Below the pieces are notes generated by a model that was not told where the DNA came from, did not search any database, and worked only from the letters and a program-made list of their open reading frames with translations. From Hemiscyllium ocellatum (taxonomy: Eukaryota), in the NCBI RefSeq assembly GCF_020745735.1, contig NC_083412.1, positions 59,424,320-59,488,319 on the forward strand: a stretch of 64,000 nt of DNA, read 5' to 3'. The number at the start of each line of letters is the position of its first letter. Position 1 is the first letter of the stretch. Below are positions 3,968 to 62,203 of the stretch, piece after piece. A program made the position numbers and the translations under genes.

Positions 3968-5240
3968 TCTAGGCTTTGTGCATGGGAATTCATGTCTTAA
4001 CTTGATTGAACTTTTTGAGGAAGTAACAAAGAGGATTGATAAGGGCAGAGCAGTAGATGCGATCTATATGGACTTCAGTTAGGCGTTCGACAAGATTCCC
4101 CATGGGAGACTGGTTATCAAGGTTGAATCTCACAGAATACAGGGAGAATTAGCCACTTGAATGCAGAACTGGCTCAAAGGTAGAAGACAAAGGGGGGTGG
4201 TGTATGGTTGTTTTTCAGACTGGAAGCCTGTGACCAGTGGAGTGGCACAAGGATCGGTGCAGGATCCTCTACTTTTTGTCATTTACATCAATGATTTGGA
4301 TGCAAGCATAAGAGGTACAGTTAGTAAGTTTACAAATGACACCAAAATTGGAGGTGTAGTGGACAGTGAAGAGGGTAACCTTCGATTACAACAGGATCTT
4401 GACCAGATGGGCCAATGGGCTGAGAAGTGGCAAATGGAGTTTAATTCAGATAAATACAAGGTGTTACATTTTGGGAAAGCAAATCTTAGCAGGACTTAAT
4501 GATAAGGTCCTAGGGAGTGGCGCTGAATAAAGAGACCTTGGAGTGCAGGTTCATAGCTCCTTGAAAGTGGAGTCGCAGGTAGATAGTAACTGAAGAAGGC
4601 GTTTTGTATGCTTTCCTTTATTGGTCAGAGTATTGAGTACAGGACTTGGGAGGTCATGTTGCAGCTGTACAGGACATTGGTTAGGCCACTGTTGGAATAT
4701 TGCATGCAATTCTGGTCTCCTTTCTATTGGAAAGATGTTGTGAAACTTGAAAAAGTTCAGAAAAGATTTACAAGGATGTTGCCAGGGTTGGAGGATTTGA
4801 GCTATAGGGAGAGGCTGTACAGGCTAGGACTGTTTTCCTTGGAGCATCTGAGGCTGAGTGGTGACCTTTTGGAGGTTTACAAAATTATGAGGGGCATGGA
4901 TAGGGTAAATAGGCAAAGTCTTTTCCCTGGGATCAGGGAATCCAGAACTAGGGGGCATCGGTTTATGGTGAGAGAGGAAAGATATAAAAGAGACCTAAGG
5001 AGCAACTTTTTCACGCAGAGGGTGGTACGTGTATGGAATGAGCTGCCAGAGGAGGTGGTGGAGGCTGGTACAATTGCAACATTTAAGAGGCATTTGGATG
5101 GGTATATGAAATAGGAAGGGTGTGGAGGGATGTGGGCCGGATGCTGGCAGGTGGGACCAGATTGGGTTGGGATATCTGGTCGGCATCGACGGGTTGGACC
5201 GAAGGGTCTGTTTCCGTTCTGTATGTCTCTATGACTGTAA
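3968..5240 (+). mobile_element. 5'-truncated CR1 LINE nested in the Penelope element
   Basis: GVAQGSVQDPLLFVIYINDLD, SKFTNDTKIGG, RTLVRPLLEYC..FWSP; typical CR1 3' tail ending ctctatgac. Confidence 0.93.
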
Positions 5241-5444: not shown

Positions 5445-5571
5445 GGATCTCCATTCACTGTAACAGTCACAAGTAAACTCCGTAAGCACACTGGTATATT
5501 TCATTGCTGCACGTTCTGTTCTAGTGGTGGACAAAAGGATATCCGTTGTGGTTGCAGAGGCACAATGCCTG
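5445..5571 (+). CDS. TRIM45: TRIM45 penultimate coding exon (end of filamin repeat plus Cys/His-rich C-terminal region)
   Basis: Acceptor tattcttttcccAG (5443-44), donor GTgag (5572). Translates GSPFTVTVTSKLRKHTGIFHCCTFCSSGGQKDIRCGCRGTMP(G), matching the recalled vertebrate TRIM45 segment GSPFTV..R.H.GVFHCCTFCSSGGQK.ARC.CGGTMPG. Its phase-1 end matches the next exon. Confidence 0.93.
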
Positions 5572-6203
5572 GTGAGTTTAATAGAAAATCTCACTTGTAA
5601 TTGTTCCATTGCAGATAGCCAGACATTGAATGATAAAACTGGGGCGAAATCCATTCAAAATATCATTACTCAGAGATAAACAATACAAACATGAACCTCT
5701 TAATTCTACAGCTATAGTTTCATATGCTTTATATTCTGAGAGGTGCAAGTGAAACACCATTTTAATCATCTGAATGCAATGAGGCCTCAATTTTAATACA
5801 CAATTAATAATAGACTCATGCCTCAGAATATGTAGTATGCATTGCATGATAATTTACACTTGCAGATTCTTTAATACATTGTTGATATACTTTATAAGTG
5901 AGTAACACAGCTCACTGATTTTTTAAAAAATTTCTTACTGTGTTGTAAATAAAAGTGATTTGACAGTCCATATAAATAATGTTTGGAAATAGAAAAAAAT
6001 GAAACAGCACAAATAATGGCAGAGAATAGCTTTTTAAATTTATCCTCCCTAATTTATTTTCTTAAAGTGTGAAAAATCATCTATGCAAAGGGGAGGTTTT
6101 TTTTTGTAGACTCTGAAGCTATACATGATTGTTTTGAAGTAATTAAATGTGGACAGAGAGGAAAAGATGACTTATTCATGTATGCTGTTCCATCCAGCTC
6201 ATG

Positions 6204-7075
6204 AAAGAACAAAGAACTCTACAGCACAGGAATAGGCCCTTCGGCACTCCAAGTCTGAGCTCACACATTTTGTCCTTCCATACTAAAACTGTCTTCACTT
6301 ACAGAATCCGTTTCCCTCTATTCCCTTCCTTTTCGTGTATTCATTCAGGTGTTGCTTGAATGCTGCTATTGTGTTTGCCTCCTCCACCACCTCTGACAGT
6401 ACGCTCCAGCCACTCAGCACTCTGCGTGAAGAACTTGCCTCACATCTCTTTTTTTTTAAACTTCCCCCACTCCCAACACCTTGAACCTGTGTCCCCTAGT
6501 AATTGTCCCCTCCATCTTGGGAAGAAAACCTCATACATTCCACTCTTTCTGTGCCATTCACAATCTTATAAACTTCTATAAGGTCGCCTTTCAACCTCCT
6601 GGGTTCCAGTGAAAACAAACCTAGTTTATCCAACCTTTCTTCATAGCAAAATCTCCCATAATAGGCAACATCCTGGTAAACCTTTTCTGTACCTTCAAAA
6701 CATCCAAATCCTTCTGGTAGTGTGGTGATCAGAACTATACAATATTGCAGATGTGGCTTAACTTGTCTATCCTTCTACTCAATGCCTCTTGCACTAAAGG
6801 CAAGCATGCCATAACCCTTTCCTACTACCTTATCTACCTGCATTGCCACCTTCAGTGATCTGTGGAACTACACACCCAGATCGGCATATCAGTACTGCTG
6901 AGGGTTTTGCCATTCACTATACAAATTTCACTGGTATTTGTCCTTCCAAAATGCATCGCCTCACATTTGTCTGGATTAAACTCCATCTGCCATTTTTCTA
7001 CTTTTGCCTCCAACTAATCTATATCTGGCAGTATCCTCTGACAGTGTTCCTCACTATCCGCAATCCCACCAATCT
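6204..7075 (-). mobile_element. CR1 LINE 3' fragment
   Basis: aaagaacaaagaactctacagcacagg tail; reverse-strand WQMEFNPDKCE-type and 3' ORF2 remnants. Confidence 0.85.
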
Positions 7076-7262
7076 GAACAACTTATTGAGAAAATACAAT
7101 TCAGAGTATAGGGTTGAATATAAACACTTGCCTTTTTATAGAAAGTAGAAATGTAGTTAGTGTGATGAAGGGCATTGTTTCTGACATGACACTGCATAAA
7201 ATTTACAGGGATTGTTGAATCTACAGTATTATGAAACTTTGTTCTTTGTATTCAATTGGCAG

Positions 7263-7411
7263 GTGGGTACCAAGGCTGTGGACATGGGCACAAAGGACAC
7301 CCGGGCCAGCCACACTGGTCCTGTTGTGGAAAGTTGACTGAACATTCAGAATGCCCTGGAACAATAAATAGCAACTCTCACCAGAGCCTGGTTAGAACTG
7401 TTGCTTTGTAA
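7263..7411 (+). CDS. TRIM45: TRIM45 last coding exon
   Basis: AG acceptor at 7261-62. Translates (G)GYQGCGHGHKGHPGQPHWSCCGKLTEHSECPGTINSNSHQSLVRTVAL*, matching the recalled TRIM45 C-terminus GGYLGCGHGHKGHPGHPHWSCCGKFNEKSEC...SLLRTVAL. TAA at 7409-7411. Confidence 0.95.
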
Positions 7412-12979: not shown

Positions 12980-14450
12980 GACAAAGAACAAAGAAAATTA
13001 CAGTACAGGAACAGGCCTTTCGGCCCTCCAGTCTAGATCCTGTATCTAAACCGCTCCCTTATTTTCTAAGAATCAGTGTTCTTCTGCTCACTGCCCATTC
13101 ACATACCGGTCTAGATATGTCTTAAATGGTGCTATCGTGCCCACCTCTACCAGCTCCGCTGGCAGTGCATTCGAGGCATCCACCACCCTCTGCATAAAGA
13201 ACTTTCCATGCATATCTCCCTTCAACTTCTCCTCCTCACCTTAAATTCATGGCCCCTAGTAATTGAGTCCCTCACTCTGGGAAAAAGCTTCTTGCTCCCC
13301 ACCCTGTCTATACCTCTCATGATATTTTAGACTTCTATCAGGTCCCCCGTCAACCTCTGTCTTTCTAATGAAAATAATCCTAACCTACTCAACCTCTATT
13401 CATAGCTAGCATCCTCCATACCAGGCAACATCCTGGTGAGCCTCCTCTGCACCTTCAAGCATCCACATCCTTTTGGTATTGTGGTGACCAGAACTGTATT
13501 CCAAATGTGGCTGAACCAACATCTTATACAACTGTAACATGACCTGCAACCCCTGTACTCAACACCCCATCCATTGAAGGAAAGCATGCCATGTGCCATC
13601 TTGACCACTCTATCAACCTGCATTGTCACCTTCAGGGTACAATGGATCTGAATACCCAGATCTGTCTGTACATCAATTGTCCCTAGGACGTTTCCATTTA
13701 CCATATAGTTTGCTCTTGAATTGGATCTTCTAAAATGCACCACATCATATTTGCTTGGATTGAACTCCATCTGCCATTTCTCACTCCATCTAGCTAGTAC
13801 ACCCTGGACCCCATGCGACTTCACTTTCTCCATTTGCCTACAATGAGGAACCGTATCAAACACCTTACTGAAATCCATGTATATGACATTTACAGCCCTT
13901 CCCTCATCAATCAATTTTGTCACTTCCTCAAAAAATTAAGTTGATAAGACATGACCATCCCTGCACAAAACCTGGGCCTATCACTGATAAGCCCATTTTT
14001 TTTCCAAATGGAAATAGATCCTATCCCTCAGTATGTTGCCCAGCAGCTTTCCAACCACTGACGTCAGGCTCACCGATCTATAATTACCTGGATCATCCCT
14101 GCTACCCTTCTTAAAGAAGGGGACAACATTAGCAATTCTCCAGTCCCCTGGGACCTCACCCGTGTTCAATTATGCTGAAAAGATACCTGTTAAGGCCCTA
14201 GCTATTTCCTCTCTTGCTTTCCTCAGTAACCTGGGGTAGATCCCATCCGGACCTGGAGACTTGTCCACCTTAATGTGTTTTGGAATATCAACACTTCCTC
14301 CCTCCTTATGCCAACTTGACCTAGAATAATCAAACATCTATCCATAACCTCAACATCTGTCCTGTCTCTCTCCTCAGTGAATACCAATGCAAAGTACTCA
14401 TTAAGAATCTCATCCATTTTCTCTGACACCACACATAACTTCCCCCCTTT
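12980..14450 (-). mobile_element. CR1 LINE RT region and 3' end
   Basis: VIYMDFSKVFDTVPH, WQMEFNPSKYDV, PGDWRIANVVPFFKKGSRDDPGNYRSVSLTS. Confidence 0.9.
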
Positions 14451-16999: not shown

Positions 17000-17100
17000 T
17001 AGTCAAGGAAGTGCGTTTTCTATTACAGAAGAGGAAATGAAATTAATGCAACAGTGTGGCTCAGTGACTTTGATTCATCCAAAACGTGTGGTTGTTTTTA
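17000..17100 (+). promoter_or_regulatory. Candidate lymphoid/haematopoietic promoter of the NCR3-like gene
   Basis: ETS site AGGAAGTG 17006-17013; ETS-IRF composite GGAAatGAAA 17033-17042; AP-1-like TGATTCA 17071-17077; RUNX TGTGGTT 17087-17093. All lie within 115 bp of the ATG. Confidence 0.6.
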
Positions 17101-17116
17101 TTACTGTGACCAAGGC

Positions 17117-17153
17117 ATGATGTTGACTGTTATGTTGCTTGTGTTTTCAATCA
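17117..17153 (+). CDS. NKp30/NCR3-like receptor exon 1: signal peptide
   Basis: ATG ATG TTG ACT GTT ATG TTG CTT GTG TTT TCA ATC A|GTGAGT = MMLTVMLLVFSI(S). Hydrophobic leader, consensus phase-1 donor, 116-bp intron to the V exon. Confidence 0.88.
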
Positions 17154-17269
17154 GTGAGTACATCGATTCTACTTTTAAGTAACATGCATGATTAATCATT
17201 TCGTATTGTGGCCGTCTTATTAGAATGGATCAATTTTTTTTTACTACCTACAAAATTGTGTTGTAATAG

Positions 17270-17620
17270 GTGCTGCCACTGAACTGAAGCTGCTACAATC
17301 TCCCTCATCACTGAGGCTGCAGGAAACCCATTCTGCCCGTTTCTTTTGCCTTCTACAACACAAAGGTAACGCAGTGAATGGCAGTTTCTATTGGCATCAC
17401 ATTAAAATAACATTTAGTGAATCGCAAGTGAGAAATATCAGTACTGAGGAAGGTGGTCGCATCACTTTCTTCAGTAGCAACGTGCCTAGTTTCCACAGCG
17501 TACTGATCATTGAAGACCTTCGTTATACTGACAGCGGTTTGTATTATTGTAACATGATCATTCATGGAGGTTCACATCCGAGAAAGATCACTGGCACTGG
17601 GACTCGCCTAATTATTCAAG
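17270..17620 (+). CDS. NCR3: NKp30/NCR3-like receptor exon 2: germline-joined VJ-type Ig domain
   Basis: AATELKLLQSPSSLRLQETHSARFFCLLQHKGNAVNGSFYWHHIKITFSESQVRNISTEEGGRITFFSSNVPSFHSVLIIEDLRYTDSGLYYCNMIIHGGSHPRKITGTGTRLIIQ. Has B-strand Cys, C-strand Trp, D.G.YYC and a J-like TGTGTRL. GS..W, QVRN....GRI and TGxGTRL parallel recalled human NKp30 (IGSVTW, EVRNGTPEFRGRL, TGNGTRLVV). AG acceptor 17268-69, GTAAG donor 17621. The Ig V call is near certain; the NCR3 orthology is inferred. Confidence 0.8.
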
Positions 17621-17975
17621 GTAAGGGAAAATACCTCGATGAAACTCCCTACAAGTTTGGGTTAGGCATTGAATTGGCTTCTAAAAAAGCACATTTTGTA
17701 CAGCTGAAAATCCTACGCTTGTTCTGTTTATGACCTATTAACATAAGACTGTGAGAAAGTCTGTAAACAAGCCGAAAAGAGCCCCCTCCAGGCTTTTCTG
17801 ACAGCGGTGTGGAACATTTTCCACTGTCTGGTGTTCTGCCCAGTCAGTTGAACAATCCTTTTTCAACACAGATGAAAGGCTTAACAGACAATCAATTTTT
17901 CAATGTATAATTTCAGTTACATTACACTGTAAATGTTTGCTATAAATTCTGTGTTACCATCGAGCCCTCCACAAT

Positions 17976-18012
17976 CACCTGATGAAGGACCGTCCGTCCG
18001 AAAGCTACTGTG
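17976..18012 (+). ncRNA. Hammerhead-like motif in a third pLTR family (element about 17840-18100, in NCR3-like intron 2)
   Basis: CAC-CTGATGA-A-GGAC CGTCC GTCC-GAAA-GCTA. Perfect stem II and AGCU palindrome. Confidence 0.55.
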
Positions 18013-20930
18013 CTTCCAATTAAACCTGTTGGACTATAACCTGGTGTTGTGTGATTTTTAACTTTGTACACCCCAGTCCAACACCGGCATTTCCAAATCA
18101 TTCGAATTTAACTGAGAGCCCTTTTTAATAAAATGTTTTAATCGTCCTGTTATAATACACCGCTGAAGGGGCTGAGACTTGAATTGAGGTGAAGCTCAAG
18201 TCACACTGTCACCCAGACCACAAGAGCCCGAAATAGCCCGTGATATTGTGTTCACATATAGATGACAAAACAGCCACAAAACTGAGCACAGAAAGGCATT
18301 TAGCAACCAACTTTGGGGAAATTGTTTCAGATGTAAGATGTAATTGTACACGCCATAGTGTGTTCCTTCTTAGAATTTCTACAACATTAAAGCGCAATTA
18401 AATTATAACAGCAGCAAATGTCCTTTGGTTGATATTTAAGAAATATACGCTGTTACAATAGTACTCAATGGTGGAAAGATTGCAGAAATACAGAAGACCA
18501 TCAGTTCTCTTTCTCTGCAGGAGCAGTCAGCCTTCCCTTTGCCTGTACCCCTGCCGTTTTTTTTGACCCACCCACAAAGTGATAATCTAAATACCTTTGG
18601 AAATTTGCTAACTTTTCAGAAAGTTTTCCTCTGGTCCCCACAGTTTTGGCCAATGGGAACTATCTCGACTCTGGACCCCTTGCGATGTTTCATACCTATC
18701 AAAATTCCTCTCAATCTTCTCTTTAAGGAGAACAATCCCAGGACCCAGATAAATTTTATAGGGATATGTATACAAATCCCACCATAGCAGATAGTCAAAT
18801 TTGGATCAATAAAAATCTAAAATTTTAAAACAAGCCAACTTAATGATGAGTAACGGTGACTGTCAATTATTGTAAATATCTATCCAGTTCACTTATGTAT
18901 TTTAGGGAAGGAAACTGCTGTCCTTATCTGATCTAGCATACATGTGGTTCCAGACACAGAAATAAGGTTAACTCTTAACTGCCCAGTGACAATTAAGAAT
19001 GGACAATAAATGCTGGCTGAGCCAGTTACATCCACATCCATGAATGAGCTAACAACAAAAAATGTCCCTTGGCATTCCACTAACGCAGCCTGGAACATGC
19101 ACACACTTACTGCCAATGAATGATGCACATTGTCCCTTGGTATTAATGCTGAGGAATCCTTTAACTCTATCACCACTTTATCACCCTTCTTCATGTTTTA
19201 CCATCAAAAAGGGCGACTCATAACCATGCCTTCAAGTGTCAGTATTTATATTATATTTGGAAAACATTATTACATGACAAAGCTGTAACAAGGAGAAAAT
19301 GCAATTTCAATGCTCAGCCTAATAGAGTAGCCTTTGCCCTTGGCTGATTCTATTTGATCCACTCTTTGTAGACTGAAAGGAGGTGGAAGCATTCTATTGA
19401 CTTGTCTTAGCTGAGACATCTGCAGTGGTTAACCTCATCATGGATGTACAGACGGGGGAATCGCCAGAGGACGCTGCTTTTGAATCATTGCAAGGCAAGC
19501 TTCCTCATCCTGGCTCTGCTGCACAAACGCAAAGGCAGTCACCTCACAAGGAATGCCACATGGTTTCTCCCTGGTGACACTCTCACTTCTTGGTGTGCAC
19601 TCTGATGTCTGGATGGGAGTGCCAGCAGAGGCCCAACTGAGACCCTCTTGAAATATTAAGGTGCTGCCAATGCCACTGTCAATCTAGAAAACATGAGACT
19701 GCATCCTGTGGACAGCAGCACACAGTTCCTTTATGCATTGAAGGTGCTGCCACCAATGGCTCAATGTTGTAGGTGTACTAAATAAATGAATACAGGATTT
19801 CAGGAAAACAGGACTGCAATCATTTGTTTCAGACACATATGTGAAGGGAAAGCCTTAATAATGAAGCTTCAAGCTCAGTCTGTTGGCTGACAGAAAATCT
19901 TCAAGCTTTATACAGATTAAGCACTTATATTACAATCCCCACACTTTAAGATCCAAATGTCCCACTTTACCTTTGTTTTCCATAATCTTTCATAGGCATT
20001 GTCTGTTTGTTCACCTAAGGCCTCTGAAAATATGGCTTCGAGTCACTAACTTTGATAGTCTGAATGCATTTTTGTTATTCATTGCTTTACACATCTGTGC
20101 TTTGCTAGCTTTGTGTATTACTGACTGACTGCATGGCTAAAGCTTAACTCACTTAACCCTTTCACTCACCATATGGTTCACCAGTCTTTCATTGGAGAGG
20201 CTTATACATACACAGCCCTGAGCCATAACCATGCACATGAACCGGATGGATTCTTACACTTTCAGCTCCTGATCCTGCACAGCCTTGGGATACTGATGAA
20301 GGGTTCTGGCCCAAAACATTGAATTTCCTGTTCCTTGGATGCTGCCTGACCTGCTGTGCTTTAACCAGCAACACATTTTCAGCTTGGGATACTCAGACCA
20401 GTAACAGAAGTGTTTCTACATTTCACATCAGAAGCTGCATTCCTAGGACTTCGGAGGCTCTGCAGCTGCATATCTCAGCAAAGTTATGTTTGTCCTCCCT
20501 CCTTTGGGGGAATTGCCCACTTCTATTTCAGCAACATTCTGATGGCTGATTCATGCTCCTCACCCAAAGTCAGTGAGTGATCTAATTGCGTATGAGAATT
20601 CACTAAGATGAACGCAAACATGTACAGATTAGGTGGATTGGCCACGCTAAACTGCCTAGGAGAAAGTGAGGACTGCAGATGCTGGAGATCAGAGTCGAAG
20701 AGCTTGGTGCTGGAAAAGCGCAGCTGGTCAAGCAGCATCCGAGGAGCAGGAGAATAACCCGCTCATCATTCCTGATGCCCCAAACATCGATTCTCCTGCT
20801 CCTCGGATGCTGCCGGACCGGCCATGTTTTTCCAGCACCACACTCTTTGACCATGCTAAATTGCCACATAGTGCCCAGGAATCTGCAGGTTAGGTGGGTT
20901 AGCTCTTGTAAATGCAGGGTTAGATTAGAT

Positions 20931-21246
20931 TAGATTACTTACAGGGTAGAAACAGGCCCTTCAGCCCAACAAGTCCATACTGACCTACCGAAGCACAACC
21001 CACCCAGACCCATTCCCCTACATTTGCCCCTTCATCTAACACTACGGGCAACGTAGCATGGCCAATTCACCTAACCTGCACGTTTTTGGATTGTGGGAAG
21101 AAACCGGAGCACCCGGACGAAACCCACGCAGACACGGGGAGAATGTGCAAACTCCACACAGAGAGTCACCTGAGGCAGGAATTGAACCCAGATCTCTGGC
21201 GCTGTGAGGCAGCAGTGCTAACCAATCAATGTGCCATCGTGCCGCC
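20931..21246 (-). mobile_element. HE1/V-SINE
   Basis: Reverse complement of the same SINE consensus. Confidence 0.88.
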
Positions 21247-24200
21247 AAGGGCGGTCTGGGTGGGATGCTGAAAGTCAGTGCAGACTCAGTGAGCTAATTG
21301 ACCTCTATCTGCACTGTTGGGATTCTGCGATTATATCTGCAATGTACAGATGGTGCATTTGTAAGGTGTGATGGTGAGTGTTTGCTGATCATATTGGCTT
21401 ATTGATAGAGAGGGAGAGGTCTCCTTATGTGGACATTAACACCTGTGTGTGAGAAGAGATCATGAAATTTAGCATTGGAGAGTAGATATCTCTCTTGGAA
21501 TGAGGCTTTCCAAAGAAAATTGGTGTTTGGTGTGCAGCTGAGTATGTGGAGTACATTACAACTCCTAATAAGTGCAATGTCAATGTCAATGCCAATTTTT
21601 CCCTGACTGACATCTTCATTGTGTATGACTCTGACTCATACTCCCTCTTCTGTTGAGGTAATGATATGAAGATCGGTTACCCTACACCTCTTTGGGTACT
21701 CTCTTACGTTTCTGCTCATGGATGAAAGAGAGCGTGACAGAGCACTGTCAGTGGCAGCTGCTCCAGTTCATTGGGGTACATGAATCAATGATGGCACATC
21801 CTCAGCAACATTCTGAATGTGAGCCATTCTGAGCATTTCGTCGTGGCCAAGGCACATGGATTCTCCTGGTAAGGAGCAGCATGCACCCTCAGATTCCTCA
21901 AAGTCTGTCGGCTGCAGCAAAAATCCAGCCTCTATGTATTTCATTGTCCTGGGAGCTTTGGCTTTGATTGTCATACCTTTCCTTGTCAGGAGGGATGTAG
22001 CTTCACCTTATGTGATCCATGCCCTTTTTATATTAGTCCACTGTTCCTTTAAAGTTTTGCCTACCAATCTTCCACTACAATGTACTAGTGTGTGGCACCT
22101 GATGTAATCTCATGATTACCATCTTTGAACCTGGATTGTCCTCCTTGGACAAGGTTGAGAGGAGATGTGATAGAAGTTTTCAAGTCAGGAGGGGCTGAAT
22201 AGGGTTGAGAGGCAGAAACTGTTTCCATTGACAAAATAACCGAGAATTAAAGAACATTTAAGGTGAATGGTTAAAAAAAATGTAGAGTTTAGTGCGGAGT
22301 TATTCTTATAGTGAGTGGTGAGGATTTGAATGTATTGCTTGAAATGGTGGAAACATATTCAATCATGGCTTTTATAAAAGAATTGACAAGTAACTGAAAA
22401 GAAAAAAGTTCACAGAAAAAGAGCAGAAATTTGCAGTGAGACAGCATGGATACAAAGATCTTCTGTGCTGTAACCAATCTATGATTTAGTATTGATTTTG
22501 ATATTCATTATCCTACTTTTACAATTTAACTTAAAATAATATATCAAATATATAATTTTAATCATAAATGACCATAAAAACTCTACTAAGGTCTCCCCTT
22601 ACATGTTCTTTTCCTTGGCTAGAAATCAAAGCCTTTCCAAGTATTGTCTCAAATCCAGAATCCAGTTTCTAAAGATTAGCTTTCTGGTCATTTGTTTCAT
22701 GTGACATTTAGTACTTGATTCTCTCCCTTGTGCTTCTGCAACAAAGATTACACACAGTAGTTAATTTGTCATCTCACAATTACTTTGCACTGTTGGCCAT
22801 GACTCCCTCTAACATATATTCTAATGTTTGGGATGTAGGTCATAGGAGAAAGAGAGGACTGCAGATGCTAGAGATCAGAGCTTAAAAATGTGTTGCTTGT
22901 AAAGGGCAGCAGGTCAGGCAGCATCAAAGGAGCAGGTCAATCGACATTTCGGGCATAAACCCTTCTTCAGGAATGTATAGGTCATACTCTTAATTGATTT
23001 TTATTTGCCATTCCTCATTGGCTGGGCATGTTGACATGTTAAATATTCATGTAAAGCACAACAAGATGACACCATCTCATTTCCTCTGCCTGTTGCCATG
23101 GTGACCAGATTATAAAAAAGAATGTTCATGCCTTCATTTGGAAAGGACAACATTTGACTTGGGTTTGAAATCAAAGACAAAGTAGTTTTACTTACATTTC
23201 TCTACTCTGGGAAATATCATTTTGATGACAAGGTGGAGCAGGGGAAGTGGCCGGATGGGAGGGGCTGGGCAGTTGTCATGATGATGGCTATTTGTCAGCC
23301 TGAGGCCCACTGCAGGTAACAGGAATAGTTCCCAATTTCTTACTGCCTGGAATTGAAACTCATAGGTTACAGTATGTTGGAATTCATTACAGACATCTAG
23401 GAGGTGGGATGAGGATTGTAGGCAAAATGTTTGGGATTTAAAAAGCTGAGAAAGACACAGAGGATGGTTTAACTATGGAATGAGCTGCCAGAGGAGGTGC
23501 TGCAATCTGGTATAATCACAACGCTTAAAAGGCATCCGGATGGATGCACGAATAGGAAGAGTTTAGAGAGAAATGGGCCAAATGCTAACAAATGGGACTC
23601 AGTATGGACGAGTTGGACCCAAGATTCTGTTTCTGTGCTGTACAACTCTACAACATTATGACTGTACTTAGACTTCTATGATTGTTTTGGCTTTATCCAT
23701 GGAATTTGCAATAAAGCTTCTTTTTTTCTTTTGAGTTACTTTGTCTGGATAAATTTAGTTTGCCATTGTCCTGCTCATTTATAAATTTTATGCAAATTGC
23801 TCTGTATCGTTTTAGTCGCTTCTTTTGATGTGATTATGCCTTCTACTCATCAGCTTTGAACACTTTATATTAATAACTCCAATTCAAGTCATGCACATTA
23901 GAAGTAGTGGTGATTTCACCTTGGAAACATGGGACATCCCTTCCAGTGCTTCCACCAACCTACTCCCCTACACTTTGTGATCAGACCTCTGTGAAGATTT
24001 TGTTTGCCACATTAAATTTATTTCTTACATCAATTTCTAGGGTTGGATGTGAATGTCGCAAAATTTGGCAAAAGGAACAACCTAAGCTGCACCATTGTTC
24101 CTGAGGAATTCTGAGTATCTGTTGATAGATAGACCACTTTTTTAGATTAAACTTTAACAGATCATGCATTTCTTTATATTTATATATTGTGATTACTGCT

Positions 24201-25107
24201 GAAAGTTTGTTTCTTAATATTAACTTTCTTAAATCTAATTTTCACAGATGTGATGCACAAGTATAAATTCTATGAAAGTAGGTATTATATTATTATTATT
24301 TTTCACTTTCCGGTCAGAATTGCCAGTTGATAATTTAATTATGTCTCATCATAAGTGAAGGTGGGCAGGAATGAAAGAAATGCAATGAGACAAAAAGGAA
24401 CGTGCGTATTTGGAAAGGAAAGGAACTGACAGCAGTGAATCCTCACAAGATGACTCTGCAGAACTTGACAATTGTGTTAAAATTGTCAAGAACATCCAAA
24501 GAAATATTTTATTTTTATATTTTCCAAATGAAATATTATGCCTAGAAAAAATAAATAATATTCAAAGATGAGCCTTTAATTCCTTCCAATTCTTTCTGAA
24601 CTAGTTCTTGCAACTTGAATTATTTGTTAATTGCTCGAAGTTCTTTCAATGGAATGATTACCTACATCACCAAATGGCTGCTGTGCACTGCAGACATGAC
24701 GTCAGATATCAGCTGCCTGCAACAGGACAGGTTGCAAGAAATACTGGTGCATGAACCAATGCAATCATTACTATCTATATTGTATGCAATACCAACATCT
24801 GTAGCACATGTGCCACTGAAAAGGAGGCTGAGGAGACAAGAAAAGGCTGGGGCTTTGGCAGGAGCTGGGACAAAATCCATTGCCAGGAGCAGGAGCAGGA
24901 ATAGGGAGAGTCAGCCTCCATTCGTCTGTTCTATAAAATAGATTTTATGACACAAAGATCTGAAGGGATCTCTTATTTTCGCACCATATTTAAGACTGGC
25001 TGCTGATTTCCATCATTTATCAATGATTTAGGATTTCACTTTGTGATACACATCATATTTTCTTACAATTGAAGGATTATATTTTATTCAGACTGGTTAT
25101 GTTGCAG

Positions 25108-25205
25108 AAGCCAAGACCACGTTGGGCTCTTCCCTGTCAATCATCCGCTACATTTTGTTCGTTCTGCTCCTATGTTACTTTCTCCTCATTGAGAAATTCT
25201 ACTAA
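25108..25205 (+). CDS. NCR3: NKp30/NCR3-like receptor exon 3: stalk, Arg-containing TM, short tail
   Basis: Acceptor gttgcAG (25106-07), phase 1, in frame with the V exon: (E)AKTTLGSSLSIIRYILFVLLLCYFLLIEKFY*. The Arg sits 14 residues after the V domain (15 in recalled human NKp30, KEHPQLGAGTVLLLR). TAA 25203-05, AATAAA 25212-17, GTACGT donor 25219. Confidence 0.75.
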
Positions 25206-25999
25206 ACATGAAATAAAGGTACGTACATGCACCATATTCAAATGGCACCTTGCGTGTTCAGTGGTTTTCACTTGTTCATGCTAACTTGATTTTAAAATTG
25301 AGGAAAATACAGAAGTAGACTGTCTTTATTCTCCGACATGCTGTGTTATTTAATCCTATACTTCATTCTTCTTCATTAAATTTCCTCAATTATCTAGCTC
25401 TGCTAATGGTTAGAGTGGTCTTTCTTTGACAACATCCAGCTCTATCTCTCTGCCAATTTTTTTCAACCTTGTAACCTTCTCTATGTGATCAGACTGCTTT
25501 GTCTGACATTATAATGTGTGGTTCACAAATTCCTCGAGTTGAATATTTTAAGACTGGTGAATTCCCGTTGGTCTCTGACAATCAGGTTTAATTTATTTCT
25601 CTGATCAACCTGTTCACAAATGTTATTACACATCTCTGGAACAGATGGGACTTCAACCCAGGCCTCCAAGTTCGGGTGAAGGGACATTACCACTTAGCTA
25701 GAACAAAATCAGGTTTAATGAGACACATAATCATGTAAAACATTACCAATGCAAACTGCTAACCCTTCTGATCTCCAGAAAAAAATGACTGGAAGGTGGG
25801 ATGGTGCTCATAAGCTGAGTTTCTGTGCTTGTTTGACCTGTAGAGCACTGAATTTGCCCCCACTGAGGAGTTCAGTGAGAAAAGAAACCTCATCTCCCTC
25901 CACTGACCGTCTTTCCAAGAGGCCTTTCCACCAACAAATCCCCAGCAATAACTTTCAATATATGGAGCTGTCCTCCAATCTAACCAATGTGTAATTCCT

Positions 26000-36004: not shown

Positions 36005-37270
36005 TAAGACTTGAAAAACGTGGTGCTGGAAAAACACAGCAGGCCAGGCAGCATCTGAGGAGCAGGAGAATCGACGTTTCGAGCATAAGCCCTTCTTCAG
36101 GAATGAGGCTGGTGTGCCAAGTGGGCTGAGATAAAAGGTAGGGGAGAGAGAATTTGGGGGAGGGGTGATAGGAATACGATAGGTGGAAGGAGGTGAGGGT
36201 GAGGGTGTTAGGCTGGAGAGGGGGTGGGGGCCGAGAGTTCGGGAAGAAGATTGCAGGTCAAGAGGGCGGTGCTGAATCCGAGGGTTGTGACTGAGATAAG
36301 GTGGGGGGAGGTGAGTGCCTCCTTCGTCAGGTCCATACCCCCTACCAACCTAATCTCCACTCCAGTCACCTTCCCCTGCAACCGCAAGAAGTGCACTCCC
36401 TCGTCAGGTCCACAACCCCACCAACCCAACCTCCACTCTCGGCACCTTCCCCTGCAACCGCAAGAAGTGCAACCCCTATCAGCATTCAAGAGAGACCACT
36501 CACTCCGCGACTCCCTCGTCAGGTCCACAACCTCCCACCAACACAACCTCCACTCCTGGCACCTTCCCCTGCAATCGCAAGAAGTGCAAAACTTGCGCCC
36601 ACACCTCCCCCCTCACCTCCCTCCAAGGCCCCAATGGATCCTTCTATATCTGTCGCAAATTCACCTGCACCTCCACATACATTTACTGCATCCGCTGCAC
36701 CCGATGTGGTCTCCTCTACATTGGGGAGACAGGCCACCTACTTGCGGAACGTTTCAGGGAACACCTCTGGGACACCCGCACCAACCAACCAACCGCCCCG
36801 TGGCTGAACACTTTAACTCCCCCTCCCACTCCGCCAAGGACATGCAGGTCCTTGGCCTCCTCCATTGCCAGACCATGGCAACACAACGCCTGGAGGAAGA
36901 GCGCCTCATCTTCCGCCTAGGAACCCTCCAACCACACAGGATGAATGCAGATTTCTCCAGCTTTCTCATTTCCCCTCCCCCAACCTTATCTCAATCACAA
37001 CCCTCGGATTCAGCACCGCCCTTTTGACCTGCAATCTTCTTCCCGAACTCTCTGCCCCCACCCCCTCTCCAGCCTATCACCCTCACCCTCACCTCCTTCC
37101 TATATCATATTCCCAGCACCCCTCCCCAAATTCTCTCTCCTCTACCTTTTATCTCAGCCCGCTTGGCACACCAGCCTCATTCCTGAAGAAGGGCTTATGC
37201 TCGAAACGTCGATTCTCCTGCTCCTCGGATGCTGCCTGGCCTGCTGTGTTTTTCCAGCACCATGTTTTTC
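36005..37270 (+). mobile_element. Penelope-like element, second family: GIY-YIG region flanked by inverted terminal repeats
   Basis: C..C.LLYIGET..LAERFREHL and PVAEHFNSPSHSAKDMQVLGLL..QRLEEERLIFRLGTLQP across frameshifts. About 36010-36300 is the reverse complement of about 36990-37270. Confidence 0.85.
37181..37213 (+). ncRNA. Hammerhead-like motif in the second Penelope family terminal repeat
   Basis: TC-CTGAAGA-A-GGGC TTAT GCTC-GAAAC-GTC-GA. The same motif recurs in short copies at about 28255, 36075, 57900-57960 and 62745. Confidence 0.55.
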
Positions 37271-37319
37271 AACTCTTAGTTGAAAACAGTCAAGGCAGGC
37301 AGGAACAAAGCAGAAAACA

Positions 37320-40300
37320 AGGTAGGACTGAAAAATTAAACTGCATTTATTTCAATGCAAGAGGCTCAACAGGGAAGGCAGATGAACTCAGGGCATGGTT
37401 AAGAAAACGGGACTGGAATATCATAGCAATTACAGAAATGTGGTTCAGGGATGGACAGGACTGGCAGCTTAATGTCCCAATATACAAATGCTACAGAAGG
37501 GATAGAAAGGGGGAGCAAGAGAGGAGGGGGAGTGGTATTTTTGATAAGGGATAGCAATATTGCTGAACTTAGGATATTCTTTGGAGTACATTCAGCAAAC
37601 TTATTTGGGTGGAACTTAGAAATAAGAAAGGGATGATCACCTTATTGGGATTGTATTATAGAAACCCCCCATCCCCACCACTACCACCCCCTCCCCCAAT
37701 AGTTAGTGGGAAATTTAGAAACAAACTTGTAAGGCGATTTCAGTTATCTGTAAGAATAATAGGGTGGTTATGGCAGGGGATTTTAACTTTCCAAACATAG
37801 ACTGGGACTGCAATAGTGTTAAGGGTTTAGATGGAGAGGAATTTGTTAAGTGTCTACAAGAAAATTTTCTGATTCAGTATGTGAATATACTGACCAAAGA
37901 AGGTACAAAGCCTGACCTTCTCTTGGGAAATAAGGCAGGGCAGGTGACTGAGGTATTAGTGAGGGACCACTTTAGGGCCAGTGACCATAATTGTATTTGT
38001 TTTAAAATAGTGATAGAAAAGGATAGACCAGATCTAAAAGTTAATGTTTTAAATTGGAGGGAGGCTAATGTTTACAGTATTAGGCAAGACTCACCTGGAC
38101 TTGCCCTACCTGCCTGTCTCCTTTTCCACCTATCCACTCCACCCTCTCCTCCTTGACCCATCATCTTCATCCCCTCCCCCACTCACCCATTATGCTCTAT
38201 GCTACTTTCTCCCCACCCCCACCCTCCTCTAGCTTATCTCTCCATGCTTCAGGCTCACTGCCTTTATTCCTGATAAAGGGCTCTTGCCTGAAACATCGAT
38301 TTCGCTGCACTTTGGATGCTGCCTGAACTGTTGTGCTCTTCCAGCACCACTAATTCAGAATCCAAGACCATTCAAAAGCTGATCGGGGTAGATGTTCGCA
38401 GGTAAAGGGACAGCTGGAAAATGGGAAGCTTCCAATGAGATAACGAGAATCCAGAGACAGTATATTCCTGTTAGGGTGAAAGGAAAGGCTGGTAGGTGTA
38501 GGGAATGCTGGATGACTAATTGAGGTTTTAGTTGAGAAAAAGAAGGAAGCATATGTAAGGTATAGACAGGAGAGAGCAAGTGAATCCTTAGAAGAGTATA
38601 AAGATAATAGATGTACACTTGAGAGGGAACTCAGGAGAGCAAACACTGGACATCAGATAGCTTTGGCAAATAATGTTCAGGAAATTCCAAAAGGTTTTTA
38701 CGAATACATTAAGGACAAAATGGTAACAAGGGAGAGAATAGGGCCCCTCAAAGATCAGCAAGGCAGCCTAAATGTGGAGCCGCAGGAGATGGGGGAGATA
38801 CTAAAAGAGTATTTTACATCAGTGTTTACTGTGAAAAAAGACATGGAAGATATAGAATGTGGGGAAATAGATGATGACATCTTGGAAAATGTCCATATTA
38901 CAGAGGAGGACATACTGGATATCTTGAAATGCATAAAAGTGGATAAATCCCCAGGACCTGATTATTTGTACCCTGGAATTCTGTGGGAAGCCAGGGAAGT
39001 GATTGCTGGGCCCCTTGCTGAGATATCATTGGTAATCAGAGGTGAGGTGCCGTAAGACTGGAAGTTGGCTGATGTGATGCCACTATTTAAGAAAGGGGGT
39101 AAGGAAAAGCCGGTGAGCCTGACATTGGCGGTGGGCAGGTCATTGGAGAGAATCCTGAGGAACAGGATGTTCATGTATTTGGAAAGACAAGGACTGACTA
39201 GAGATAGTCAACATGCTTTCTGTGTGGGAAATCATGTCTCACAAACTTGATTGAGTTTTTTGAAGAAGTAACGAAGAGGATTGATGAGGGCAGAGGGGTG
39301 GATGTGATCTGTCTGGACTTCAATAAGGCATTCGGCAAGGTTTCTCATGGTAGACTGGTTAGCAAGGTTAGCTCTCATAGATCTTATAGCCATTTGGATA
39401 CGGAACTGGCTCGAAGGTAGAAGACAGAAGGTGGTAGTGGAGGGTTGCTTTTTAGACTAGAGACCTGTGACCAGCAGTGTGCCTAAAGCATTGGTGCTGG
39501 GTACACTACTTTCCATCATTTATATAAATGATTTGGAGTGAACATAGGAGGTATGGTTAGTAAGTTTGCAGATGACACCAAAATTGGAGGTGTAGTGGAG
39601 AGCAAAGAAGATTACCTCAGAGTACAACAGGATCTTGATCAGATGGGCCAATGTGCTGAGGAGTGGCAGATGGAGTTTAATTTAGATAAATGCGAGGTGC
39701 TGCATTTTGGAAAAGCAATTCAGAACAGTACTTATACACTTAATTTTAAGGTTCTAGGGAGTGTTGCTGAACAATGAGACCTTGGAGTTCAAGTTCATAG
39801 TTCCTTGAAAGTAGAGTTGCAGATAGATAGGATAGTGAGGAAGTCATTTGGTATGCTTTCCTTTATTGATCAGAGCATTGAATATAGGGGTTAGGAGATC
39901 ATATTGCGGCTGTACAGGACATTGGTTAGTCCACGTTTGGAATATTGCATGCAGTTCTGGTCTCCTTCCTATCGGTAAGATGTTGTGCACTTGAAAGGTT
40001 TCAGAAAAGATTTACAAGGATGTCGCCTGGGTTGGTGAGTTTGAGCTATAGGGAGAGGCTGAACAGGCTGGGGCTGTTTTCCTTGGAGCATCGGAAGCTG
40101 AGGGGTGACCGTATAGAGATGTATATAATCATGAGGGGCATGGATAGGGTAAATTGACAAGAATTTTTTCCTTGGGGTGGGTGAATCCAGAACTGGAGGA
40201 CATTGGTTCAGGGTGAGAGGGGAAAGAAACCTAAGGGGCAACCTTTTCACACCCTGAGGCGAGGTGATTGGGGTACATGTATGGAATGAGCTGCCAGAGG

Positions 40301-41339: not shown

Positions 41340-41715
41340 TTTTGGATGTAGGTTTGCTCGCTGAGCTGAAAGGTTCATTTCCAGACGTTTCGTTCCCTTA
41401 CTAGGTAACACCTTCAGTGGACCTTATGCAAAGCAATGCTGAAAATTCTTGCTTTCTATTTACATGTTTGGGTTTCTTTGGGTTGGTGATGTCATTTCCT
41501 GTGGTGATGTTATTTCCTGTGGTGAAGTCACTTCTTGTTCCTTTTCTCAGGGGATGGTAGATGGGGTCTAACTTGATGTGTTTGTTGATAGAGCTCTGAT
41601 TGGAATACCATGCTTCTAGGAATTCTCGTGCATGTCTTTGTTTGGCTTGTCCTAGGATGGATGTATTGTCCCAGTCAAAGTGGTGTCCTTCTTCATCCGT
41701 ATGCAAGGATACTAG
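41340..41715 (-). mobile_element. Penelope 3' fragment
   Basis: HHFDWDNTSILGQAKQRHAREFLEAW. Confidence 0.9.
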
Positions 41716-42984
41716 AGGGTATGAGCTGTTTGCCATTATCGAGACATCTTTACAAGGAGATCAAAACTGTGAACTAGATATTCAGGGATGCATGAATTTT
41801 CAAAAGCATAAGCATGAAGGAAACAGTATTGAGGCAGCATTGTTGAAGAAAGGGATAAGTATGACAGGGAGACACAATCCTGTATGGGAAGATGTAGAAT
41901 CCATTTGGGTGGCAATAAGAAATACAAATGGGGTGATAAGGGCACCATAGACCCAGCAGGCCATAGGACAGACAGGTTGAGAAGGAGAGTCCATCACAGT
42001 AACCTCAGCTAGTGCAGGAATTTAACTCACACACATCCAGATCACTAGTTGTCCAGCTAATTGAGCTAACCAAATCCCAGCAAAAAGGAGGAAGAAGAAT
42101 ATGGTAGAAGTAGTCTGCATGTGCCTGTTTAAGAGCAACTAAACAGTGGGAGAGGAAATAAATCAGAAGATACGAAAACACATAAGAAAGCAGCATCTTA
42201 ATCATGGGTGACTTCAATCTTCACATACATATGAATTGTCAGATAGGCAGAGATAGCCACGAGGAAGAATTTATAGTGTGTATTCTGGACAGTCCTCTAA
42301 AATAATATGTTGTGTATTCAATTGGTGATGTATAATGAGGCTAATAAATGATATCAGAGTAAAAGCTGCCAGAAACAGTGAAGCATGGTAGAATTCAGCA
42401 TTCAGTTTGAGAGGGAGGAACATGGGTCAGAAACAACTGCACTGAGCTTAAATGAAGGCAATTACAAAGGAATAAAGGCAGAGCATGGCTGCAGTGTAGT
42501 GGGAAAAGAGTTTAGCAGCAAAGACAAATGAGGAACATGGGCAGATATACAATAAAAGAGTTCATGGCTTACAGCAAAGACAAACCTCAGTGAGCAAGAA
42601 GGAATCTAGGAGGGGGTAAGTTAACCTGAGAAGTTAAGAATAGCATCAAATTGAAGTAAATGGTGAAGATTAGTGGCAGGCCAAAGGATTGGGAAAGTTT
42701 TAAAAACCAACAAAAGAATTCTAAAAAGATGCTAAACATGGAGAAAATAGATTTTGAGGGGAAACTTTCAGCTAGACAAATAGCAAAAGGTTTATTAAAT
42801 GTATGTAAAGTAATAGAGAAGTCAAAGTGAACATTGGCCCCTTTGAGACTGAAGCTGTGAAAATAATCATCTTTGAATTTCTACAGTGTGGAGGCAGGCC
42901 ATTCAGCCCATTGAGTTCACCCCCACCCTCCAAATACCAACTCATCCAGACCCAGCCCATCCCTCTAACCCTGCATTTTCCATG

Positions 42985-61362: not shown

Positions 61363-61402
61363 GCAAACGTTTCGTCCCCTGTCTAGGTGACATCCTCAGT
61401 GC
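61363..61402 (-). ncRNA. Minimal hammerhead ribozyme motif (GUU triplet)
   Basis: GCA-CTGAGGA-TGTCACCTAGACAGGGGAC-GAAAC-GTT-TGC. Confidence 0.65.
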
Positions 61403-62163
61403 TTGGGAGCCTCCTGTGAAGTGCTTCTGTGATGTTTCCTCCAGCATTTATAGTGGCTTGTCTCTGCCGCTTCCGGTTGTCAGTTCTTGTTGTCAGCTGC
61501 AGTGGCCGGTATATTGGGTCCAGGTCGATGTGTTTGTTGATAGAATCTGTGGATGAGTGCCATGCCTCTAGGAATTCCCTGGCTGTTCTCTGTTTGGCTT
61601 GCCCTATAATAGTAGTGTTGTCCCAGTCGAATTCATGTTGCTTGTCATCTGCGTGTGTGGCTACTAAGGATAGCTGGTCGTGTCGTTTCGTGACTAGTTG
61701 GTGTTCATGGATGCGGGTCGCTAGCTGTCTTCCTGTTTGTCCTGTGTAGTGTTTTGTGCAGTCCTTGCATGCAAAACCAATGTGTACAAAATCCCATGCA
61801 AGGACTGCACAAAATATTACATAGGACAAACGGGAAGACAGCTGGCGACCCGCATCCATGAATACCAACTAGCCACGAAACGACACGACCAGCTATCCTT
61901 AGTAGCCACACACGCAGATGACAAGCAACATGAATTCGACTGGGACAACACTACTATTATAGGGCAAGCCAAACAGAGAACAGCCAGGGAATTCCTAGAG
62001 GCATGGTACTCATCCACAAATTCTATCAACAAACACATCGACCTGGACCCAATATACCGGCCACTGCAGCTGACAGCAAGAACTGACAACCGGAAGCAGC
62101 AGAGACAAACCATTATAAATGCCGGAGGAAAGATCACAGAAGCGCTTCATAGGAGGCTCCCAA

Positions 62164-62203
62164 GCACTGATGATGTCACCTAGACAGGGGACGAAACATT
62201 TGC
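62164..62203 (+). ncRNA. Minimal hammerhead motif with a CpG-type mutation in stem III
   Basis: GCA-CTGATGA-TGTCACCTAGACAGGGGAC-GAAAC-ATT-TGC. Confidence 0.55.

What the first reader, a model, noticed from the sequence alone, without database searches (positions are those of the whole stretch)
17117..25205. Complete NKp30/NCR3-like activating receptor gene hidden from the ORF track
Sequence shows: three in-phase exons with canonical splice sites give a 161-aa type I protein (leader, single VJ-type Ig domain, short stalk, TM with Arg, 4-residue tail). V and J are contiguous in one exon and no RSS heptamer/nonamer was seen. Established: NKp30 is a non-rearranging VJ receptor whose TM Arg pairs with ITAM adaptors (CD3zeta/FcRgamma), and NCR3 family genes exist in cartilaginous fish. 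Inference: the domain shares NKp30 hallmarks (GS..W, VRN with an N-glycan sequon VRNIS vs VRNGT, GR[I/L], T-G-x-G-T instead of F/W-G-x-G), and the Arg spacing is nearly the same. The FG/CDR3-like loop is longer (14 vs 11 residues between Cys and GxGT), which may alter ligand binding.
Basis: partly seen in the sequence, partly recalled or inferred. Interest (0 to 1): 0.8.

Follow-up and report, generated by a model that had tools for sequence, protein, structure and literature searches.

The report
Small shark VJ-type activating receptor gene
This is a real, unannotated shark gene for a tiny antibody-like surface receptor that looks built to signal through partner proteins; it resembles the natural-killer receptor NKp30 in design but is a separate, unnamed gene lineage sitting next to TRIM45, not the shark's own NKp30 gene.

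Summary
Three GT-AG, phase-1 exons (17117-17153, 17270-17620, 25108-25205) give a 161-aa type I protein. It has a leader, one germline-joined VJ Ig domain (Pfam V-set), a 10-aa stalk, a TM with Arg and a 4-aa tail. No RSS heptamer is present.

A Mustelus asterias orthologue (53% identical in V) ends in the same TM and tail (16/22 identical), which confirms the distant third exon. An RNA-type run holds exon words only, plus all exon-3 words. Junction reads could not be obtained.

The NKp30/NCR3 reading is only partly supported. The architecture is the same, and the best single-domain hits among 1.84 billion proteins are NCR3-family proteins (35-37 bits). ML trees place it with a tetrapod NKp30 (support 87-91). 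However, AU tests reject no alternative, PDB searches rank TCR-alpha V and shark VNAR at or above human NKp30, and a bona fide nurse-shark NCR3 is only about 30% identical. The gene lies after TRIM45, as in Mustelus, not in the MHC.

It is therefore a new, conserved member of the non-rearranging VJ receptor kind, not NCR3 itself. The scan had already noted this stretch (s1-203673) and other NKp30-like genes on other DNA of this genome.

The parts
17006..17036 (+). Possible core promoter elements: ETS/PU.1-type AGGAAG (17006) and GAGGAA (17031), about 85-110 nt upstream of the ATG, with no nearby TATA box. This is inference only.
   Evidence: Motif scan; sequence.
17117..17153 (+). Exon 1 coding part: start codon and most of the leader (MMLTVMLLVFSI + first base of Ser). 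The donor is GTGAGT, phase 1.
   Evidence: The N-terminus MML... is shared with the Mustelus orthologue P0002. RNA-type run X1 holds the exon words.
17270..17620 (+). Exon 2: end of the leader plus a germline-joined VJ-type Ig V domain (116 aa). It has Cys26/Cys93, Trp41, N-glycan sequons NGS and NIS, and the J-like motif ITGTGTRLIIQ. There is no RSS. The exon is phase 1-1.
   Evidence: Translation. Pfam V-set E 2.4e-7. Orthologues 91% and 53% identical, with both sequons invariant. AF2 pLDDT 89.8 with strands A A' B C C' D E F G and no C''. No heptamer.
18441..18580 (+). Alternative or possibly spurious 3' exon. It is used as the end of the C. plagiosum RefSeq model ('CD8 beta chain-like'). 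It has an AAG acceptor and encodes no TM, and its frame is shifted between the two species.
   Evidence: tblastn of P0001 on the window; sequence; no Pfam domain.
25075..25107 (+). Possible 5' extension of exon 3 through a weaker AAG acceptor. It is in frame and adds 11 aa, giving 172 aa against 171 aa in Mustelus. Which acceptor is used is not decided.
   Evidence: global alignment scores are 404 (long form) against 402 (short form).
25108..25205 (+). Exon 3 coding part: a 10-aa stalk (EAKTTLGSSL), a TM with Arg (SIIRYILFVLLLCYFLLI), a 4-aa tail (EKFY) and the stop codon.
   Evidence: 16/22 identical to the C-terminus of Mustelus P0002. 7/7 sampled words are held by RNA-type run X1.
25212..25217 (+). 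AATAAA polyadenylation signal 7 nt after the stop codon.
5445..7411 (+). Context: the last two coding exons of the upstream neighbour, a TRIM45-type gene on the same strand (...GSPFTVTVTSKLRKHTGIFHCCTFCSSGG... and ...GGYQGCGHGHKGHPGQPHWSCCGK...SLVRTVAL*).
   Evidence: Six-frame segments. In Mustelus the gene just upstream of the orthologue is a 571-aa RING/B-box/Filamin protein. Scan note s1-203673 says the same. Naming it TRIM45 rests partly on my memory of the human C-terminus.

Best explanation
The locus is an intact, transcribed, three-exon gene of the epaulette-shark lineage. It encodes a roughly 143-aa mature type I membrane glycoprotein with one non-rearranging VJ-type Ig domain, a very short stalk, a transmembrane helix with an Arg in its outer third, and essentially no cytoplasmic tail.

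What is shown: the exon structure; the Ig fold; conservation of the whole architecture between orectolobiform and carcharhiniform sharks; and the position directly downstream of a TRIM45-type gene.

What is inferred:
- The protein cannot signal alone. Like NKp30, NKp46 and other receptors with an Arg in the TM, it would reach the surface and signal by pairing that Arg with the TM Asp of an ITAM adaptor dimer (FcR-gamma/CD3-zeta type). That would make it an activating receptor of a leukocyte population.
- The V domain, with two conserved N-glycans, a truncated C'-C'' region and a long FG loop, would be the ligand-binding face.

In evolutionary terms it is a distinct, unnamed paralogous lineage of the NKp30-like / non-rearranging VJ receptors. 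It is not the MHC-linked NCR3 orthologue. It sits within a TTF2-TRIM45-B7-type neighbourhood that, according to other notes of this scan, also holds VJ-C1 receptors.
For: - Gene structure and ORF.
- V-set domain. Confident AF2 Ig model (pLDDT 89.8).
- No RSS. No other Ig exon in the intron or anywhere in the window.
- Orthologues: P0001 at 91% and P0002 at 53% identity.
- P0002 has the same leader-VJ-stalk-TM(Arg)-4-aa-tail layout. Its TM and tail are 73% identical (16/22) against 53% for the V domain, which fits a constrained, partner-binding TM.
- The gene span is similar: 7.4 kb in Mustelus and 8.1 kb here. Both have the same upstream RING/B-box/Filamin neighbour.
- Transcription: run X1 holds the exon-only share of words for exons 1-2 and all words of exon 3.
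- NKp30-likeness: best single-domain hits are NCR3-family proteins (P0050 is named NCR3; P0055 matches human NCR3 structures at E 2e-37). hhalign gives 96.4 against the NCR3-like group and 74.1 against the other shark family. The ML trees are. The short C'-D segment with V-x-N-x-[ST]...G-R-I is shared.
- Pairing of a TM Arg with CD3-zeta/FcR-gamma is established for NKp30 and NKp46 (PMC6514059).
Against: - No read-level proof of the 17620/25108 junction.
- A RefSeq model in a sister species joins the V exon to a different, non-TM exon.
- A second acceptor at 25075 is possible.
- Family placement is statistically unresolved (AU p 0.21-0.40 for all groupings tried), and no true TCR or Ig VJ sequences could be put in the tree.
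- PDB sequence and structure searches rank TCR-alpha V and VNAR above NKp30. The same sequence test also fails to put NKp30 first for bona fide nurse-shark NCR3, so it has little power.
- Adaptor pairing, cell type and ligand are untested.
- Only two relatives were found in protein databases.
Confidence: 0.6

Rival explanations
1. It is a true member (ancient paralogue) of the NCR3/NKp30 family in the strict sense. On this view it shares a most recent common ancestor with tetrapod NKp30 and was moved or duplicated onto the 1p13-type MHC paralogon. It would work like NKp30, including recognition of a B7-type ligand.
For: ML trees place it with tetrapod NKp30 (P0055) and a frog V-V-C1 protein at 91/89, and at 87/92 without the J columns. 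The best single-domain hits are NCR3 proteins. hhalign prefers the NCR3-like group. The architecture is identical. In Mustelus the next gene downstream carries V-set plus C2-set_3 domains, which I recall to be the B7/butyrophilin type. In human, TRIM45 is next to VTCN1/B7-H4 (PMC11565109).
Against: AU tests do not reject alternative placements. The gene is only about 30% identical to nurse-shark NCR3 and scores 21-27 bits against human NKp30, where true shark NCR3 scores 37. It is not MHC-linked. The aromatic residue of the E-[FY]-x-G-R motif is missing.
Confidence: 0.25
2. It is a C1-less offshoot of the local elasmobranch VJ-C1 (SIRP-like) paired-receptor cluster that flanks TRIM45. In that case its NKp30-likeness is only the general likeness of non-rearranging VJ domains.
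For: Scan notes place an activating VJ-C1 gene 36.8 kb upstream of the window and an inhibitory VJ-C1 gene 35.5 kb beyond its end (not tested here). The frog protein that is its nearest sister in the tree without the J columns (91/86) is a V-V-C1-TM-ITIM protein (P0020).
Against: No shark VJ-C1 protein scored above the NCR3 proteins in the exhaustive search, so any duplication would be old. The orthologue in a different shark order already lacks C1.
Confidence: 0.2
3. The main product is not the membrane receptor but a soluble or non-coding isoform ending in the exon at 18441, as in the C. plagiosum RefSeq model. Alternatively, the gene is a decaying relic.
For: The RefSeq model P0001 uses that exon. 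Run X2 holds part of exons 1-2 but no exon-3 words.
Against: The 18441 exon changes frame between the two species and has no conserved stop. The TM exon is conserved at 73% across shark orders and is present in RNA-type run X1. The ORF is intact in three species.
Confidence: 0.07

Closest known systems
NKp30 / NCR3 (human; nurse shark NCR3 QTT61904.1 = P0050)
   Same: The layout is the same: leader exon, a single-exon germline VJ-type IgV, a short stalk, a TM with a basic residue, and no signalling motif. Both have a short C'-D region with an N-glycan sequon followed by G-R-[IL]. NCR3 is the best named match in the exhaustive protein search and in hhalign.
   Different: Only about 30% identical to shark NCR3 and about 27% to rat NKp30 in the structural alignment. 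The FG loop is 2-4 residues longer. The shark NCR3 TM has Lys rather than Arg, and the TM sequences are unrelated. The gene lies beside TRIM45, not in MHC class III. Phylogenetic membership is unresolved.
Shark IgNAR V (VNAR) and TCR-alpha V domains
   Same: These are the closest solved structures to the AF2 model (VNAR Z 15.4-16.7, rmsd 1.4-2.0 A; TCR-alpha V Z about 15.3-15.6). They are also the top PDB sequence hits. Like VNAR, the model lacks a C'' strand.
   Different: Those domains are assembled by RAG from V(D)J segments and are joined to C domains. This gene has V and J fused in the germline, no RSS and no C exon, and goes straight into a TM.
Other non-rearranging shark VJ genes: UrIg/UrIg2 (PMC12227049) and the VJ-C1 paired receptors noted by this scan beside TTF2/TRIM45
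   Same: They are germline-joined VJ exons kept in elasmobranchs in the MHC or an MHC-paralogous neighbourhood.
   Different: Those genes carry one or more C1-type domains. This gene has none, either in the window or in the Mustelus orthologue.
CD8 beta (the name given to the C. plagiosum orthologue)
   Same: A single V domain with a J-like G strand. It is among the AFDB Swiss-Prot structural hits.
   Different: This gene has no long hinge with a dimerising Cys, has a charged TM, has no cytoplasmic tail, and is not at a CD8 locus. The RefSeq name comes from automatic annotation.

Membership tests
NCR3 / NKp30 | Single extracellular IgV domain of VJ type, encoded germline-joined in one exon | tested here: met
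   V-set domain, contiguous G-x-G-T-x-L J motif, no RSS.
NCR3 / NKp30 | TM with a basic residue (Arg in mammals) and a tail without signalling motifs (PMC6514059) | tested here: met
   SIIRYILFVLLLCYFLLI + EKFY. The Arg is conserved in Mustelus.
NCR3 / NKp30 | Groups phylogenetically with NCR3 to the exclusion of other VJ families | tested here: inconclusive
   The ML placement is with tetrapod NKp30 at 91/89 and 87/92. AU tests do not reject five alternatives. No TCR/Ig VJ sequences were available for the tree.
NCR3 / NKp30 | Orthologous position in MHC class III (next to AIF1/LST1) | tested here: not met
   The upstream neighbour is a TRIM45-type gene, here and in Mustelus. Scan notes place another NKp30-like gene next to AIF1 elsewhere in the genome (not tested).
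NCR3 / NKp30 | Association with CD3-zeta/FcR-gamma and binding of B7-H6-type ligands | not testable with these tools
   Needs co-expression and binding assays.
Rearranging antigen receptor V genes (TCR/Ig/IgNAR) | V segment ending in an RSS, separate J segment, downstream C exons | tested here: not met
   No heptamer, J fused in the V exon, no C-type exon.
Elasmobranch VJ-C1 (SIRP-like) paired receptors | VJ domain followed by a C1-set domain | tested here: not met
   No Ig domain in the intron ORFs or elsewhere in the window. Mustelus P0002 is V-only.
CD8 beta | Long hinge with Cys, uncharged TM, cytoplasmic tail, CD8 locus | tested here: not met
   10-aa stalk without Cys, TM Arg, 4-aa tail, TRIM45 neighbourhood.

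The most novel reading that the evidence does not exclude
The TRIM45-adjacent VJ receptor may be a relic of the proto-MHC VJ gene set kept on the 1p13-type paralogon. It may also be the cognate receptor of the neighbouring B7-type gene, which sits where VTCN1/B7-H4 lies in humans. That would parallel the linked NKp30-B7H6 pair and would point to a receptor lineage for B7-H4-type ligands that mammals lost. B7-H4's receptor is still described as poorly understood (PMC13588502). A related reading is that its VNAR-like, C''-less germline VJ domain is close to the non-rearranging stock from which IgNAR/TCR-type V domains arose.
Probability: 0.07. Interest if true: 0.8.

Novelty: new member of a known kind. 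Interest (0 to 1): 0.48.

Why it matters
Germline-joined VJ genes in the MHC and its paralogous regions are the raw material in current models of how antigen receptors arose (PMC12227049, PMC10751288). Activating receptors with a TM Arg are the basic design of NK-type recognition.

This gene adds a compact, conserved elasmobranch member that current annotation misses or mislabels. It is absent from this genome's protein set, is called 'CD8 beta-like' with a wrong 3' end in C. plagiosum, and is 'uncharacterized' in Mustelus. It also sits in the TTF2-TRIM45-B7 neighbourhood.

It gives comparative immunologists a defined candidate for adaptor-pairing and ligand screens, and a further VJ lineage to include in trees of NKp30, VNAR and TCR V origins.

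Tried and rejected
- All three word-indexed protein searches returned only P0001 and/or P0002, so no named TCR, Ig or CD8 VJ sequences could be added to the trees.
- DNA of the C. plagiosum and Mustelus loci could not be fetched because the files were too large. Exon-level synteny and dN/dS were therefore not possible, and the Mustelus downstream Ig gene could not be identified beyond its Pfam list.
- ESM Atlas gave only generic V-set neighbours (PD-1, Ig, CD22-like) and nothing for the TRIM45-type exon.
- Ranking PDB hits by phmmer/hmmsearch was rejected as a family test, because true nurse-shark NCR3 also ranks antibody V domains above NKp30.
- AU tests were indecisive.
- A search of intron 2 for a mini-exon matching the extra 10 stalk residues of Mustelus found nothing.
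- A CD28-family reading was rejected: there is no PPP or EIP loop motif and no tyrosine tail (PMC11599192).
- The rearranging V-segment, VJ-C1 and CD8-beta readings were rejected as set out in the membership tests.
- Flajnik et al. 2012 and Ohta & Flajnik 2015 are not held in the library.


Full report
**Observation**

The three exons are present exactly as described.
- Exon 1 (17117-17153) starts with ATGATG and ends at the donor ATCA|GTGAGT.
- Exon 2 (17270-17620) follows a T-rich tract and a TAG acceptor, and ends at CAAG|GTAAGG.
- Exon 3 (25108-25205) follows ...tgttgcag and ends in TAA, with AATAAA seven bases later.

Both introns are phase 1. The spliced CDS is 486 nt and gives 161 aa: a leader, a 116-aa Ig domain, the stalk EAKTTLGSSL, the TM SIIRYILFVLLLCYFLLI and the tail EKFY. 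Exon 2 is a Pfam V-set domain (E 2.4e-7) with the J-like strand ITGTGTRLIIQ in the same exon. There is no RSS heptamer in or next to it. An HMM built from VJ domains, Pfam scans of the intron ORFs and Ig-motif scans find no other Ig exon anywhere in the 64-kb window.

**Is it a real gene?**

An exhaustive phmmer search of 1.84 billion representative proteins found two close relatives.
- P0001 is from Chiloscyllium plagiosum, is annotated 'CD8 beta chain-like', and is 91% identical.
- P0002 is from Mustelus asterias (XP_078088791.1, 'uncharacterized') and is 53% identical in V.

P0002 is 171 aa and has the same layout. It ends in SVVRYILFVLLMCYFILVETFY, against SIIRYILFVLLLCYFLLIEKFY here (16/22 identical). 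The third exon, 7.5 kb downstream, is therefore confirmed by orthology across two shark orders. The TM (73%) is better conserved than the V domain (53%). Both N-glycan sequons are invariant.

The Mustelus gene spans 7.4 kb, against 8.1 kb here. It lies 6.7 kb downstream of a 571-aa RING/B-box/Filamin (TRIM45-type) gene on the same strand, and 10 kb upstream of an Ig gene with V-set and C2-set_3 domains. In the window, TRIM45-type terminal exons lie at about 5445-5597 and 7260-7411 on the same strand. In human the gene order is CD101-TTF2-TRIM45-VTCN1 (PMC11565109).

**Transcription**

Run X1 (150 M letters) holds 0.63 of the sampled 31-mers of 17100-17700. Exon-only content predicts about 0.60, and the runs that hold the genome (X3-X6) score 1.00. 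X1 also holds 7/7 words of 25108-25225. A run of that size could not hold these words as genomic DNA, so it must be spliced RNA.

Two uncertainties follow.
- The C. plagiosum RefSeq model joins the V exon to window 18441-~18580. That exon changes frame between the two species and has no conserved stop, so I regard it as a minor isoform or an annotation artefact.
- A weaker AAG acceptor at 25075 is also in frame and would give 172 aa. Alignment to Mustelus does not decide between the two forms (402 against 404). No mini-exon matching the extra Mustelus stalk residues exists in the intron.

**What family?**

Evidence for an NKp30-like assignment:
- Outside its own family, the best single-domain scores are P0046 (catshark, 36.7 bits), P0050 (nurse shark NCR3, QTT61904.1, 35.9 bits) and P0055 (35.0 bits). 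P0055 matches human NKp30 structures at E 2e-37.
- The alignment shows the same short C'-D segment, with V-x-N-x-[ST] and G-R-I, as the NCR3-like group. Another shark multi-V family has a long Ig/TCR-like C'-C'' region.
- hhalign scores 96.4 against the NCR3-like group and 74.1 against that other family.
- ML trees (LG+C20) group the gene with P0055 and domain 2 of a frog V-V-C1-ITIM protein, at 91/89 and at 87/92 after removing the J columns.

Evidence against a firm assignment:
- AU tests do not reject holding it with the other shark family, a NAR-type V, a Polypterus multi-VJ protein, a turtle protein or the nurse-shark NCR3 clade (p 0.21-0.38).
- In the PDB, TCR-alpha V and VNAR domains score at or above human NKp30, both for the window sequence and for a three-sequence profile.
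- The AF2 model (pLDDT 89.8, no C'' strand) is closest to shark VNAR (Z 16.7) and then to TCR-alpha and IgL V domains. NKp30 is not in the top 50, and rat NCR3 is rank 11 in AFDB Swiss-Prot.
- The PDB ranking has little power, because true nurse-shark NCR3 also ranks antibody V domains first. Even so, that protein scores 37 bits with human NKp30, against 21-27 bits for this family.
- Bona fide shark NCR3 is a different gene, only about 30% identical. Other notes of this scan place NKp30-like genes elsewhere in the genome, including one next to AIF1 (untested here).

I conclude that this is a distinct lineage of non-rearranging VJ receptor. It is NKp30-like in design and most similar to NCR3 among named families, but it is not shown to be an NCR3 family member in the strict sense, and it is certainly not the orthologue.

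**Mechanism**

What is shown is a type I protein with one glycosylated VJ domain, a 10-aa stalk without Cys, an Arg five residues into a strongly conserved TM, and a 4-aa tail without any tyrosine motif.

What is inferred from established receptor biology is the mode of signalling. NKp30 and NKp46 pair a TM Arg with the TM Asp of CD3-zeta/FcR-gamma (PMC6514059). By analogy, the Arg here would need an ITAM adaptor dimer for surface expression and signalling, which makes this an activating receptor. The ligand is unknown. The long FG loop and the C''-less face are the likely contact surface. ETS/PU.1-type motifs about 100 nt upstream of the ATG fit leukocyte expression but are only a hint.

**Context and novelty**

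Scan notes, not tested here, report an activating VJ-C1 gene between TTF2 and TRIM45 36.8 kb upstream of the window, and an inhibitory VJ-C1 'SIRP-alpha-like' gene 35.5 kb beyond its end. The gene therefore sits in a cluster of non-rearranging VJ receptors on the 1p13-type MHC paralogon.

I found no paper describing a TRIM45-linked VJ receptor. The key Flajnik 2012 and Ohta 2015 papers are not held, so prior description cannot be excluded.

I rate it a new member of a known kind. It is of moderate interest for the evolution of NK-type and antigen receptors. There is also a low-probability but attractive possibility that it pairs with the neighbouring B7-type gene.

Noticed in passing
window 18441-18787 (+): This exon is used as the 3' end of the C. 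plagiosum RefSeq 'CD8 beta chain-like' model. It has an AAG acceptor. Its frame is shifted between the species, and in this genome it stays open to 18787. It may be a soluble isoform or an annotation artefact.
   Followed up: partly
window 25075-25107 (+): A second in-frame acceptor for the TM exon would add 11 aa, giving 172 aa against 171 aa in Mustelus. Which acceptor is used is undecided.
   Followed up: partly
window 61383-62183, also 41401-41736 (-) and 47747-48064 (-): A head-to-head pair of near-identical ORFs with a GIY-YIG-like motif (...HEFDWDNTTIIGQAKQRTAREFLEAWHSS..INKHI), typical of Penelope-like elements. Further copies lie at the other two positions.
   Followed up: no
window 36224-39055 (+): A GC-richer block (0.505) with overlapping proline-rich ORFs, followed by what looks like the start of a LINE endonuclease/RT. 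It is probably one LINE insertion. RT fragments also occur at 4161-5114, 13396-13923 (-) and 57204-57698.
   Followed up: no
window 5445-7411 (+): The last two coding exons of a TRIM45-type gene, ending ...SLVRTVAL*. The same neighbour lies upstream of the Mustelus orthologue.
   Followed up: partly
window 17006-17036 (+): ETS/PU.1-type motifs (AGGAAG, GAGGAA) about 85-110 nt upstream of the ATG, with no TATA box nearby.
   Followed up: no
P0010 cluster (Scyliorhinus torazame), P0007/P0026 (Hemiscyllium ocellatum), P0053 (Rhincodon typus), P0047 (Narcine bancroftii): A large elasmobranch family of multi-V proteins with a conserved W-G-x-I-x-G-x-G-T-x-L J region. Its members are variously auto-named 'Ig kappa light chain-like', 'IGSF2/3-like' or 'SIRP-like'. 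It is distinct from the NCR3-like group in the trees.
   Followed up: partly
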